Positions 17,113 through 23,870 of a DNA stretch of 64,000 bases are shown one piece after another. The translations under genes and the position numbers were made by a program. Source of the DNA: Asterias rubens (Eukaryota); the NCBI RefSeq assembly GCF_902459465.1, contig NC_047074.1, positions 1,364,001 to 1,428,000 on the forward strand, in the 5' to 3' direction. The stretch's first letter is position 1. Every line of letters starts with the position of its first letter. A model generated the notes under the pieces. It ran no database searches, was not told the origin of the DNA, and saw nothing but the letters and a program-made list of their open reading frames with translations.

Positions 17113-20100
17113 ATGGCTTCCGCCTGGCAAACTGATGGAGAGTGCCACTTTACCTGGAACCTCGAAGAAAACCCCGTAGTCATTAAAACTGCCGATAAAA
17201 TGTTACGTAATATAACGAACAACTTAGCGGAAACCGACTTCCTCAAGATTGAGCATCTTCTGTTCAAAGCATGTCTTCAGGTATGGTTTAAAAAAGCCAC
17301 AGACGCACTTGTGTCCCTCGACGAAGCAAAGCAAGAAATTGAAAAACGAAGAGGCGAAGATGAATACAAAGGTTACAGGAGCGTTGAACTCCTAAATCGC
17401 ATGTGGATTGAACACACCATTTTACCCAGCAACAGGATTTTGTTTGAGTTACATGAAAAACTAAAAACCATACAGTTAGAGGAGAAAGATTTGCTAGTCG
17501 TTGGTGCAATTAGATCAGCGGCCCTCATGCGACTTGGGCCTGTTATGTTTGACACTAATCTGAAACTCTTCAAGGCAGCCCACCAAGCGTTCCCTTCAAA
17601 TCCAGACTTTCTCTTTGGAGTTGCATTCATCACAGGCAAGAAAATGAGATTCATGAGACGAATAGGCTCGAGATACTACTGCAGAATGGACCCAGTTGGA
17701 AAATCCCTGATGGATGAAGAGAGGGGATACTGGGAAACTCTAAAAGACATGAACCTACCTGATAACCGTTCCTGTCTTGTGAAGTCAATGCTTGGATTGA
17801 ACTTGAGTAGGCGTGATAGGAAAAAGGAGAAACGTGAAGCCTTGGAATTGTTAGAAACGGCATACAAAAATGCGCCAGAAATAATTGAAGTGTGCAGAAA
17901 TTGTATCCGTTTCAAAAAGAAAGAAGATCTGAAAGGGGCTGTATCTATGCTGGAGATAGCCATCTCCGAACAACCAGGACGGGCCGAAAATCATCACCAG
18001 CTTGGCCTGTGTTACGATTTGTACGCACAAAGAGCCAAAAAGAAAGGGGAAAATGCTCTTGAGTGGAATAACAAGGCACTTGCCGAACTTGATGAATGTC
18101 TTAGATTGAAAAGTTTACATGTCTATGCCGCATTGACTAGGGCAAAACTGTTGGAAGACATCCCGAACAGGAACCCAGAAGATGAATACACGAATATGTC
18201 TTGTATGGATTTTACTACAGACGACAAGCTTAAGATTTACGAAGAATTTGCTTCTTTTCTTAACAAGAACGAGACGGCGTCTAGATACAACGCCAGATTT
18301 GACATGTGGCAGGAAGTTATGAACATTTCCACTGAACACTTTGGACATCAAAATGAATCAGGTAAATGGGAAGCGACTCTAAAAGCGAACGATTCTAAAA
18401 CTAAAGCGTACAAGGTATTGGAAGAGCACTACAAAGGTCAAGCAGATCATCTGAAGCTTGGAATTCTATTCTACCAGAACTATGAGTTCGATCAAGCCAT
18501 CGACATGTTGGCCACAGTGGACCAAACAAACGCCGAAGTGCCGTACTACCTTGCAAAGTCGTATCTCAAAAAAGGTCAAGAGAAAACTGTTGGCGATCAA
18601 GCAAATCCCGTAGAAGCAGCTGAGGATTTCACAAGGGCTCGTGAGAAAGTACAGTTGGCACGAAAGTCAGGATTGGAACCACAACAGGTTCGAGAAGTAC
18701 TAGCGGACACAGCTCTGGCAATCGCACACAATGAACTTCAGGCCAACGCAAATGACGTCATTCAACTGGAAGACAAGTGTGTGACGTCATATCGCAAGGC
18801 AGTCAGATGTGGAAGCCTGGTCGCCGTTTTGGAGCTGATGAAGCTGGTTGAGAAGGGCCTCATCAAAATCACCTCGATCTCAAGATTCATCCAGGTGAGT
18901 CTATTAGCTGTTCATTGAATTTATTTAAATTATATGCGGTAAGAACCGTATGCATGGACTATACTATTCATTTATTAAACAATCTGGACAACTTGTTCGC
19001 AAAACTAGGTATCACAATGACAACTAAGCTATGTCACATTTCTATCATACTATCTGAGGCATGTTTGAAACATTTGGTGACGACGTATTTAAACAACGAG
19101 TACAGGGAGCAAGAGATTAAAAATCAAGGCACTTTGTATCAGAGTGTCAAAGTTCCTACAAATAAGTATTCCTAATGGTTTGCTGTTATATAAATCTTTA
19201 AATTAACAAAAAGCATGCATGAAGCTAAAGAAGTCGACAGATTCTAACAGCCTTTTATTCAGTCGAAACAATACTGTTGTAAGTTGGATTTTGGTTTTTG
19301 ATTGATTGCAAATTTCTAGATGTTGGCAGAAATAGAGGTGTGTTGTTCACAGTCCCAATCTGACGCCCTACATGGTGAATCTAAGCCACTGACGTTCGAA
19401 GGAGGCTTGAGATCCAAGGAAACTGATATCGAACCTTGCATGCTGATGAATCGCACCAAGATCAAAGCAGATATCAAGGGAATCCTGTCAAAGGAAAAGT
19501 TTTTCCAAAAGGCAAGAAAGGGACTTTTCGAAATGGAGGTTGAACTACTCAAGGAAAGGTTTGGAGGTAAGCTTATTGATAGCTCAACGTAAACAAAGAT
19601 TTTTCTCTCTCTTTTTTTTCTATAAGTTTGTTGTATAATTAGCTAGTTGTAGAACAAGTGGGTTGTTCACAAAGGAGTTAAAGTTAAGAAATGAATCTCC
19701 ATCAAGCTTTGATTTCTACGATTATTGGTAAAATAGTAGACAATTTGCTCACATGCATCAAACACTTGTATTGTTACTATTATTTCACAATTTTGTCATC
19801 CTTGGAAAAAACTCTTTAGGTACCGATGGACATGGATTAGATGGGAGAGAAGAGGCGAGTCCGTTAGAGGGCGTAACTGATGACGTAATCGACAAGGCTG
19901 TTGGCAGCTGTTGTGATACGAGACCTCTGCTTGATCGTGTCATGGAAAAATTTCTGGTATTTACACAAACAAGACGTTATATTAATCATATTTTGAGCTC
20001 AAACAATTATCATCCAAATTTTTCATCCAAAATTATTATTATAGTTTTTTTTTTTGGGGGGGGGATATCAGAATTTTATATTTGCTTGTTTATATAGACA

Positions 20101-23100: not shown

Positions 23101-23870
23101 GGGGTCCGGGTCAATTGTGACCCGGATGATTTAAAGAGTGCCTGTTGCTCCTCATCATCTTTTAAAGTTTGAAGTCAAGTTCACCGCTGTTGGTTTTGAC
23201 TTATCACATAATTTCTCCCTATCCAGGAAAACCTGTACCCAACGTTTCCATTTCTAGACAAATGCCCAGTCGAGAACAAACAATCCTGGGAAGGAAACGT
23301 GAAAAAGCAGCTCAAATCAAAAGAACTCCCGTCTCAGAAAATCACCAACGACAAAAAATTGCTTGAAATCATTTTAAAGGTAGGTAACCGGAAAAATAAA
23401 AGACGTTGATGTAAAAGCTCCAACGTCACACGTAGGCCTATTAAGAGAACGTTTTGCAAATATCCATAGCGCAATCGCTATTACTGTTGAATGAGGTGCA
23501 TGCTGGTCTATAGCTTGCTACTAGTCCGCGTTGGTATACGCATTGCATTGTCTAGTGCGAAAAGAGGTTAAATTAGGCTTTTAATGAGTTTTCTTCTTAA
23601 ACACCCAAGAAAATTATCGTTACGTTAGGAATATATTTTTGTTATTTTTATTGACAGGCACAGCCGTGTTCCAATGAGGATAACTACCGTTTCATAGCAA
23701 TGCGAAAGTTCCTCGATGATCGGTCGAGAAAAATCTTCAAAGACACGGTATCCATCGTGAAAGGAACAAACGCCACGGAGTCTTATGGCGTCTTGGATCT
23801 CACTCGGTGGTGTGTGAACCATGCTGAGAAGTTGGCCTCCGAAGTCATGGCTTGTATGAATCAACTTTAA
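17113..23870 (+). CDS. IFIT-like: IFIT-like TPR protein fused to tandem HEPN-like domains, copy B (1089 aa)
   Basis: Eight coding exons in compatible phases, all GT-AG: 17113-18894, 19320-19566, 19820-19956, 20881-21045, 21233-21565, 22363-22602, 23227-23379, 23658-23870 (3270 nt incl. stop). CHFTWNL, FPSNPDFLFGVA, HHQLGLCY; C-terminal RPLLD / NYFP / LQP / NKTKH. Every exon has an inverted homologue in copy A. Confidence 0.87.
20461..20846. mobile_element. Kolobok-like MITE, family K3 (intronic, copy B only)
   Basis: Right end aaaccaattctgtaatgttcct-TTAA; internal sequence is the reverse complement of the element at 61778-62083. Confidence 0.75.
21619..21884. mobile_element. K1 MITE, internally deleted
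   Basis: TTAA-AGGCACTTAACAC...ttggtaatttt ... ttaccaatagtgtcctttgcct. Confidence 0.65.

What the first reader, a model, noticed from the sequence alone, without database searches (positions are those of the whole stretch)
19820..23870. The effector is an internal tandem duplicate with one intact and one degenerate HEPN-like repeat
Seen: repeat 1 (B) is CCDTRPLLDRVMEKFL | ..NNYFP..YPKLYDYLLK | LQPK..FCTVVNKTKH..ELARQSTDKVEEIC. Repeat 2 is CHKTCLEADKLLNKSLQSK | ..PTFPF..KLLEIILK | AQPC..MRKFLDDRSRK..DLTRWCVNHAEKLA. Phase-0 introns fall at equivalent positions (before the FP exon and at K|xQP), and both repeats are preceded by an exon starting MLA. Repeat 2 lacks N-x-x-K-H in both paralogues yet is well conserved between them. 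Established: HEPN active sites form at a two-domain interface. Inference: an intramolecular pseudo-dimer with a catalytically dead partner, acting as scaffold or autoinhibitor, or requiring ligand-induced dimerisation.
Basis: partly seen in the sequence, partly recalled or inferred. Interest (0 to 1): 0.7.

Follow-up and report, generated by a model that had tools for sequence, protein, structure and literature searches.

The report
Duplicated tail domain of starfish IFIT-like protein
The tail of a starfish IFIT-like protein is an old internal duplicate of a helical domain known only from starfish and brittle stars: the first copy keeps a conserved, active-site-like set of polar residues and the second has lost it, but the domain could not be shown to be a HEPN RNase.

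Summary
The window is Asterias rubens DNA. The region is the 3' part of an intact 8-exon, 1089-aa gene (17113-23870, +). A 67% identical head-to-head paralogue lies at 12119-5683 (-).

The duplication is real:
- Profile-profile comparison of repeat 1 against repeat 2 gives E about 1e-5 over 149-221 collinear columns. Column-shuffled controls reach at most score 25.9, against 45.6 for the real alignment.
- Brittle-star genes carry a single copy that matches both repeats (E 2e-13 and 6e-7).
- The brittle-star gene has the same phase-0 intron at K|LQP.
- Separate AlphaFold models give the same order of helices.

Repeat 1 keeps all family-invariant polar residues: R..LD on helix 2, Q of LQP, and N..KH at the end of helix 3. 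Repeat 2 keeps only the Q.

HEPN identity is not established. The defining arginine is V or A in every member, no Pfam, NCBIfam, PADLOC or PDB sequence search gave a HEPN match, and no Foldseek match reached E 0.1. The motif position and the helix-2 acidic residue do fit HEPN.

Exon 1 is IFIT-like (IFIT5 E 5e-8, shared ECHFTWNL). The intramolecular pseudo-dimer idea could not be tested here.

The parts
17113..18894 (+). Exon 1 of the + gene (aa 1-594): IFIT-like TPR module. Its last ~30 codons (from AVRCGS at 18799) already belong to repeat unit 1.
   Evidence: phmmer against PDB: IFIT5 E 4.8e-8 over residues 8-346, IFIT2 3e-7, IFIT1 2e-4; shared ECHFTWNL and HHQ.GLCY. Pfam TPR_19. Unit start from hhalign.
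19320..19566 (+). Exon 2 (starts MLAEIEV): N-terminal part of repeat 1, including helix 1 (FFQKARKGLFEMEVELL). Ends in phase 1.
   Evidence: Gene model with GT-AG borders. Aligns to the first half of exon E. AlphaFold helices 45-58 and 60-80.
19820..19956 (+). Exon B: helix 2 of repeat 1, with the family-invariant R..LD (TRPLLD at 19918-19935).
   Evidence: Predicted helix 105-133.
20881..21045 (+). Exon C: the insert between helices 2 and 3 of repeat 1 (NNYFP at 20911-20925; YPKLYDYLLK). Phase-0 introns on both sides.
   Evidence: Aligns to exon F.
21233..21565 (+). Exon D: LQP, helix 3 ending in N-K-T-K-H (21290-21304), helix 4 (ELARQSTDKVEEIC), then from about 21452 (AIIQGG) the start of repeat unit 2. 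It looks like a fusion of the old last exon with a copy of the exon-1 tail.
22363..22602 (+). Exon E (starts MLALINH): helices 1 and 2 of repeat 2 (LRKGYLEVEAALL; CHKTCLEADKLL). R and D of R..LD are replaced.
23227..23379 (+). Exon F: the insert of repeat 2 (PTFPF; W.G.VKKQLK; KLLEIILK).
23658..23870 (+). Exon G: AQPC, helix 3 of repeat 2 without N..KH (MRKFLDDRSRK), a beta hairpin, the last helix (DLTRWCVNHAEKLA), and the stop codon at 23868-23870.
5683..12119 (-). Head-to-head paralogue (LOC117298856; 1100 aa, or 1099 in isoform X2). Exons 12119-10311, 9861-9615, 8891-8746, 8321-8151, 8005-7673, 7216-6983, 6301-6152, 5895-5683. Same two repeats; NMTKH at 7948-7934.
   Evidence: 67% identical to the + gene.

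Best explanation
The region encodes the C-terminal half of a starfish IFIT-like protein. That half is two tandem copies of a helical domain of about 200 residues, found so far only in sea stars and brittle stars.

Shown:
- An ancestral gene of the form 'IFIT-like TPR + one domain', as still seen in the brittle star Amphiura, underwent a duplication of the segment from the end of the TPR exon to the end of the coding sequence. The old last exon fused in frame to the copied exon-1 tail, giving exon D.
- The introns before MLA and before the FP exon sit at matching places in both copies. The K|xQP intron is also shared with the brittle star.
- The duplication predates the split of Asterias from Patiria and Acanthaster.
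- Copy 1 keeps every family-invariant polar residue: Arg and Asp one turn apart on helix 2, Gln of LQP, and Asn-x-x-Lys-His at the end of helix 3. Copy 2 keeps the helix order and hydrophobic core but only the Gln.

Inferred:
- The TPR module binds RNA as IFITs do.
- Copy 1 is the working site. Most likely it is a metal-independent RNA-cutting or nucleotide-binding site with HEPN-like topology, in which Lys and the helix-2 Arg stand in for the missing motif Arg.
- Copy 2 is a non-catalytic structural partner of copy 1.

I put the duplication at about 0.9, 'one intact and one degenerate copy' at about 0.8, and the RNase-type mechanism at about 0.3.
For: Gene models: intact, GT-AG; database protein P0001 is 100% identical to the minus gene.

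Repeat 1 against repeat 2:
- hhalign E 1.1e-5 over 161 columns.
- Extended units give E 4.8e-6 over 206 columns.
- Shuffled and reversed controls all score far lower.

Outgroup: Amphiura single-domain proteins match repeat 1 at E 1.9e-13 and repeat 2 at E 6.1e-7. Their only coding intron is phase 0 at K|LQP.

Structure: AlphaFold models have pLDDT 74.7 and 72.0. Secondary structure agrees at 82% of aligned columns, against 42-62% for slid registers.

Invariants: R, D, Q, N, K and H are invariant in 14 sequences from two echinoderm classes. Repeat 2 lacks R, D, N, K and H.

HEPN description: motif at the end of helix 3, insert between helices 2 and 3, acidic residue on helix 2 (PMC3710099).

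N-terminus: IFIT-like.
Against: - No significant sequence or fold match to any HEPN or any other known domain.
- The HEPN Arg is absent in all members.
- The alignments are shallow (Neff about 2-3) and the models are of medium confidence.
- Whether the helix-2 R/D and the N..KH lie close in space, and whether the two copies pack together, could not be checked.
- Ka/Ks of repeat 2 between the two window paralogues is 0.77, and 1.2 for exon G, so recent constraint on copy 2 is weak or hidden by gene conversion.
- No expression or biochemical data.
Confidence: 0.6

Rival explanations
1. Both copies are HEPN domains forming an intramolecular pseudo-dimer. Because HEPN sites are built from two juxtaposed motifs, the dead copy 2 holds copy 1 in an inactive pairing. 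Activity then needs ligand-driven pairing of two copy-1 domains from two molecules.
For: Motif placement, the Asn at H-4, the invariant helix-2 Asp and the helix 2-3 insert fit the HEPN description. The highest-probability PDB match for repeat 1 is the HEPN protein 1wwp_A, but only at probability 0.28 and E 1.5. Composite two-motif sites are documented for Las1 (10.1101/760058).
Against: The Arg of Rx4-6H is V or A in all members. No HEPN model or structure matches at any useful threshold. Packing of the two copies was not modelled.
Confidence: 0.25
2. The domain is not an enzyme. Both copies are helical interaction or adaptor modules that link an RNA-bound IFIT-like TPR to partners. The invariant polar residues bind a partner or ligand rather than catalyse a reaction.
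For: Only generic helical bundles (vinculin tail, spectrin, designed bundles) appear in Foldseek. Vertebrate IFITs act without an enzymatic domain (my own knowledge). Copy 2 has conserved surface-type motifs of its own: W.G.VKK, NY.F and DLTRWC.
Against: Six invariant polar residues, including His, Lys, Asn, Arg and Asp, across two echinoderm classes is more typical of a catalytic or ligand site. All five are lost together in copy 2, the usual pattern of a pseudo-enzyme copy.
Confidence: 0.3
3. There is no duplication. Two unrelated helical regions look alike by chance and by shared composition.
For: Single-sequence alignment is only marginal (z 2.1-4.5). Identity between the repeats is about 20%.
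Against: Profile-profile E about 1e-5 with full-length collinearity, and all shuffled or reversed controls score lower. The single-copy outgroup matches both repeats. Three phase-0 introns sit at matching places, one of them shared with the brittle star. The predicted helix order is the same.
Confidence: 0.03

Closest known systems
HEPN superfamily RNases (RNase L/Ire1 KEN, Las1, Cas13, the DZIP3-type HEPN fused to TPR in animals)
   Same: All-helical. A conserved polar-x-x-x-His motif sits at the end of the third core helix. There is an insert between helices 2 and 3 and a conserved acidic residue on helix 2. The domain is fused to TPR repeats, as reported for DZIP3-type HEPN in animal lineage-specific expansions (PMC3710099). 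Two copies lie in one chain, as in Cas13.
   Different: No Arg in the motif (V/A-N-x-x-K-H). An invariant Lys precedes the His and an invariant Arg lies on helix 2. No Pfam or PDB sequence match and no significant Foldseek match. Only one of the two copies has the motif.
Vertebrate IFIT proteins (IFIT1, IFIT2, IFIT5)
   Same: The N-terminal 350 residues match IFIT5, IFIT2 and IFIT1 structures and share ECHFTWNL and HHQ.GLCY. TPR architecture. Paralogues are clustered.
   Different: Vertebrate IFITs are about 470-490 aa and consist of TPR only. This protein carries about 500 extra C-terminal residues. A 2013 survey found no IFIT genes in invertebrates, including the sea urchin (PMC3688568).
Brittle-star (Amphiura filiformis) TPR + single-domain proteins (P0023, P0031, P0032)
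   Same: Same domain with R..LD, LQP and N..KH, the same K|LQP phase-0 intron, and the same TPR-to-domain junction (CGS ... CC).
   Different: One copy only. A 30-residue hairpin insert lies between helices 3 and 4, which sea-star copy 2 keeps and copy 1 has lost. The TPR part gives ordinary Pfam TPR matches; its similarity to IFITs was not tested.

Membership tests
HEPN superfamily | Rx4-6H motif (Arg and His) at the end of helix 3 or the start of the helix 3-4 loop | tested here: not met
   His is invariant, sits at the end of predicted helix 197-211, and Asn is at H-4. But positions H-5 to H-7 are V/A, I/L/V and T/Q etc. in all 14 aligned members, never Arg.
HEPN superfamily | Four-helix up-down core with an insert between helices 2 and 3 | tested here: inconclusive
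   The predicted helix order and a 60-residue insert are compatible. Foldseek against PDB has no match with E below 0.1; HEPN 1wwp_A has E 1.5, probability 0.28, TM 0.19/0.36.
HEPN superfamily | Conserved acidic residue on helix 2 | tested here: met
   The Asp of R-P-L-L-D is invariant in sea-star and brittle-star sequences and lies in predicted helix 105-133.
HEPN superfamily | Significant match to a HEPN family profile or a solved HEPN sequence | tested here: not met
   Searches at E up to 10 gave no HEPN family: Pfam, NCBIfam, PADLOC and PDB hmmsearch with profiles A1 and A7.
HEPN superfamily | Metal-independent endoribonuclease activity | not testable with these tools
   Needs an enzyme assay.
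Internal tandem domain duplication | Significant profile-profile similarity between the two halves | tested here: met
   hhalign E 1.1e-5 and 4.8e-6. Controls.
Internal tandem domain duplication | Shared intron positions and phases | tested here: met
   Phase-0 introns at FIQ|MLA versus YLG|MLA, KFL|KDE versus QSK|ENL (exact, within a 7-residue gap), and LLK|LQP versus ILK|AQP. The last is also found in Amphiura.
Internal tandem domain duplication | Single-copy relative outside the duplicated lineage | tested here: met
   Amphiura P0023, P0031 and P0032 have one domain and match both repeats.
Internal tandem domain duplication | Structural superposition of the two repeats | tested here: inconclusive
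   Coordinates could not be superposed. As an indirect test, independent models give the same element order, with 82% secondary-structure agreement at aligned columns.
IFIT family (N-terminal module) | Sequence similarity to IFIT TPR subdomains, including the N-terminal CHFTW motif | tested here: met
   IFIT5 E 4.8e-8 over residues 8-346; ECHFTWNL identical.
IFIT family (N-terminal module) | Induction by interferon or infection, and binding of RNA 5' ends | not testable with these tools
   No expression or binding data. No ISRE-like GAAANNGAAAST in the window, which is not informative for an echinoderm.

The most novel reading that the evidence does not exclude
Sea stars carry a single-chain 'sense and cut' antiviral protein. 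An IFIT-type RNA 5'-end sensor is covalently joined to a previously undescribed nuclease domain, restricted to sea stars and brittle stars. The domain has HEPN-like topology but a rewired site: Arg moved to helix 2 and Lys added next to the His. Its activity is gated by a degenerate internal copy of the same domain.
Probability: 0.25. Interest if true: 0.75.

Novelty: new variant of a known kind. Interest (0 to 1): 0.55.

Why it matters
IFITs are regarded as vertebrate proteins that act by binding RNA, not by cutting it.

A clear IFIT-like module in echinoderms, fused to a conserved domain with an active-site-like residue set, would extend IFIT history to invertebrate deuterostomes. It would also suggest a direct effector arm.

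The domain has no Pfam, PDB or Foldseek match, so it is a candidate new family. The intact and degenerate pair, with a single-copy outgroup and shared introns, is a clean case of pseudo-enzyme birth by internal duplication.

If it proves to be a HEPN-type RNase without the canonical Arg, it would widen the definition of that motif. If it is only a helical scaffold, the finding is a routine lineage-specific domain duplication.

Tried and rejected
- Pfam on single exons, whole proteins and all alignment members, plus NCBIfam and PADLOC: only TPR models for exon 1 and nothing consistent for the tail.
- PDB sequence search with profiles A1 and A7: noise only.
- Foldseek of both models against PDB, and of repeat 1 against viral BFVD: no match with E below 0.1.
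- Wider homologue searches: an exhaustive profile search of 1.84 billion representatives found 27 proteins. Those whose source was looked up are sea-star or brittle-star proteins, plus one unnamed Logan assembly. Two word-based searches added only Amphiura-like proteins. No link to a named family emerged.
- A first hhalign shuffle run timed out and was repeated.
- The idea that a stand-alone 'solo' domain gene (P0029) was the fusion partner was dropped. Uncalled TPR-coding DNA lies directly upstream of it, so the model is probably truncated.
- ISRE-like motif scan: none found.
- Literature searches for IFIT-like genes in echinoderms found only the 2013 survey reporting none in the sea urchin.
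- I did not build a HEPN reference profile for hhalign, because no tool supplied HEPN sequences and typing them from memory is unreliable.
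Full report
**What is there.**

The window is starfish DNA. The exon-1 open reading frame of the minus-strand gene finds Asterias rubens LOC117298856 isoform X2 (P0001) at 100% identity. All other hits are Asterias amurensis proteins.

Reading the + strand with GT-AG borders gives an intact 8-exon gene of 1089 aa:

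| Exon | Coordinates |
|---|---|
| 1 | 17113-18894 |
| 2 | 19320-19566 |
| B | 19820-19956 |
| C | 20881-21045 |
| D | 21233-21565 |
| E | 22363-22602 |
| F | 23227-23379 |
| G | 23658-23870 |

A head-to-head paralogue of 1100 aa lies at 12119-5683 on the minus strand. It has the same exon plan and is 67% identical.

The finding's coordinates run exactly from the start of exon B to the stop codon.

**Is it a duplication?**

Single sequences give only a marginal signal: Smith-Waterman z 2.1-4.5, with 3-38 of 1000 shuffles reaching the score. Homologues settle the question.

- An exhaustive profile search of 1.84 billion representative proteins found 27 relatives. The ten looked up come from the sea stars Asterias, Patiria and Acanthaster and the brittle star Amphiura filiformis, plus one unnamed Logan assembly.
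- Aligning sea-star repeat 1 (A2) and repeat 2 (A3) separately and comparing the profiles gives E 1.1e-5 over 161 collinear columns.
- Extending both units upstream gives E 4.8e-6 over 206 columns. AVRCGS..LEL..L...FIQ|MLAEI at the end of exon 1 then pairs with AIRQGG..DEL..L...FLE|MLALI at the end of exon D.
- Controls: the real alignment scores 45.6. Ninety-nine column shuffles reach at most 25.9, the reversed alignment scores 13.8, and 100 block shuffles reach at most 34.7.
- The brittle-star proteins carry one copy of the domain after their TPR region. That copy matches repeat 1 at E 1.9e-13 and repeat 2 at E 6.1e-7. It combines features of both: LRNCHLKLEQAVLAN resembles repeat 2's LRKGYLEVEAALLTN, while N..KH is as in repeat 1.
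- The Amphiura gene (L001) has a single intron in its coding sequence. It is phase 0 and lies exactly at K|LQP, the same place as C|D (LLK|LQP) and F|G (ILK|AQP) here.
- The introns before MLA and before the FP exon also coincide between the two sea-star repeats. The match is exact and within a 7-residue gap.
- Two independent AlphaFold models give the same order of elements: repeat 1 pLDDT 74.7, pTM 0.76; repeat 2 pLDDT 72.0, pTM 0.69. Secondary structure is identical at 82% of aligned columns, against 42-62% for slid registers.

Chance resemblance is nevertheless very unlikely.

**Anatomy of the unit.**

Each unit has these parts, in order:

1. A lead-in helix.
2. Helix 1.
3. Helix 2.
4. An insert of about 60 residues, holding the YFP/FPF motif and two short helices.
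5. x-Q-P.
6. Helix 3.
7. A loop or hairpin.
8. A long helix 4.

Exon D joins the end of unit 1 to the start of unit 2. It therefore looks like the old terminal exon fused in frame to a copy of the exon-1 tail.

Exons 2+B of unit 1 correspond to exon E of unit 2. The phase-1 intron 19567-19819 has no partner.

Repeat 2 keeps a beta hairpin between helices 3 and 4 that the brittle-star domain also has. Repeat 1 has lost it.

**Intact versus degenerate.**

Fourteen repeat-1-type sequences from two echinoderm classes were aligned. The invariant residues are L, R, L, D and two F in the first half, then Q of LQP, and N, K and H of N..KH. Apart from the first L, the first-half residues lie on or just after helix 2, with R, L and D forming R..LD.

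In repeat 2 the aligned positions are D and N for R..LD, and there is no N, K or H. Only the Q survives. This holds in both window paralogues and in Patiria, Acanthaster and A. amurensis.

Repeat 2 has conserved motifs of its own (FPF, W.G.VKK, QPC, NY.F, DLTRWC). Between Asterias and Patiria it is about as conserved as repeat 1: 37-43% against 38-47% identity. It is therefore maintained, not decaying.

- Ks between them is patchy, from 0.09 to 1.29.
- Intron DNA is 81-85% identical in places.
- Ka/Ks of repeat 2 is 0.77.

This pattern points to gene conversion or to recent duplication of parts of the gene.

**Is it HEPN?**

The HEPN survey describes the features to look for (PMC3710099):
- Inserts between helices 2 and 3 are frequent.
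- A conserved acidic residue lies on helix 2.

Here N..KH ends predicted helix 197-211 and the Asn is at H-4, as in RNxxxH. The insert is present, and the Asp of RPLLD is invariant on helix 2.

Against this, the defining Arg is V or A in every member. No Pfam, NCBIfam, PADLOC or PDB sequence search finds a HEPN at E up to 10. Foldseek finds nothing below E 0.1 for either repeat. The HEPN protein 1wwp_A has the highest probability in the repeat-1 list, but that is only 0.28.

A defining feature was tested and not met, so I do not file the domain as HEPN. 'Works like a HEPN' remains a live hypothesis at about 0.3. The invariant Lys next to the His, and the invariant Arg on helix 2, are candidates to supply the missing positive charge.

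**Context and mechanism.**

Exon 1 is IFIT-like. The best PDB sequence matches are IFIT5 (E 4.8e-8, residues 8-346 against 15-336), IFIT2 and IFIT1. ECHFTWNL is identical and HHQ.GLCY is shared. A 2013 survey found no IFIT genes in invertebrates, including the sea urchin (PMC3688568).

The most likely working model is inference, not demonstration:
- The TPR module binds RNA.
- Copy 1 is the working site.
- Copy 2 is a non-catalytic partner.

If the site is HEPN-like, two juxtaposed motifs are normally needed, as shown for Las1 (10.1101/760058). A chain with one motif would then be inactive until two copy-1 domains meet.

The main rival is that the domain is a non-enzymatic helical adaptor.

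**Novelty and score.**

The duplication, the intron evidence and the asymmetry are solid. The domain family appears undescribed and is restricted to sea stars and brittle stars at the sensitivity reached. Its fusion to an IFIT-like module is unusual.

The pattern of an intact copy plus a degenerate copy is itself common in proteins, and the function is unknown. I rate it a new variant of a known kind, interest 0.55.

Noticed in passing
window 5683-12119 (-) versus 17113-23870 (+): Divergence between the two head-to-head paralogues is patchy. Ks is 0.09-0.25 in the TPR C-terminus and exons 2, D, E and G, but 0.65-1.29 in the TPR N-terminus and exons B and C. Intron DNA is 81-85% identical in places. 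This suggests gene conversion between inverted copies.
   Followed up: partly
window 8880-8895 (-), exon 2/B junction of the minus gene: My acceptor gives ...ERFKVAIKGED. The database isoform X2 (P0001) reads ...ERFKAIKGED, one Val shorter. This points to alternative acceptors three bases apart.
   Followed up: no
P0002 (Asterias amurensis, 852 aa, isoform X2): This predicted isoform ends inside the exon-D region (…FFFHTMDEGKKTLKAH). It would carry the TPR module and repeat 1 only, without the degenerate repeat.
   Followed up: no
window 2-568 (-): An open frame with RING and B-box zinc fingers (TRIM-like) lies next to the 3' end of the minus paralogue and runs off the window.
   Followed up: partly
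window 27749-28726 (-) and 38022-38810 (+): An inverted pair of C-type lectin open frames (Pfam Lectin_C) flanks an UNC-93/MFS-type gene at 33032-36646 (+).
   Followed up: partly
window 43374-44480 (-) and about 51600-59884 (+): Arginase-family exons and an EMP70/TM9SF gene. These are ordinary housekeeping neighbours.
   Followed up: partly
L001-L003 (Amphiura filiformis CM076855.1, 43.31-43.39 Mb): The brittle-star TPR + single-domain genes form a same-strand tandem array lying inside a 4452-aa gene called on the other strand. The 277-aa 'solo' P0029 has uncalled TPR-coding DNA directly upstream (L002 8413-9975), so it is probably a truncated gene model.
   Followed up: partly
window, many sites (e.g. 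1059-1286, 26215-26487, 41459-41725, 42546-42803, 45363-45650) and intron 21566-22362: An interspersed repeat whose translation reads ...[34 protein letters not shown]... recurs many times on both strands, possibly also in an intron of the + gene. It has no Pfam match.
   Followed up: no
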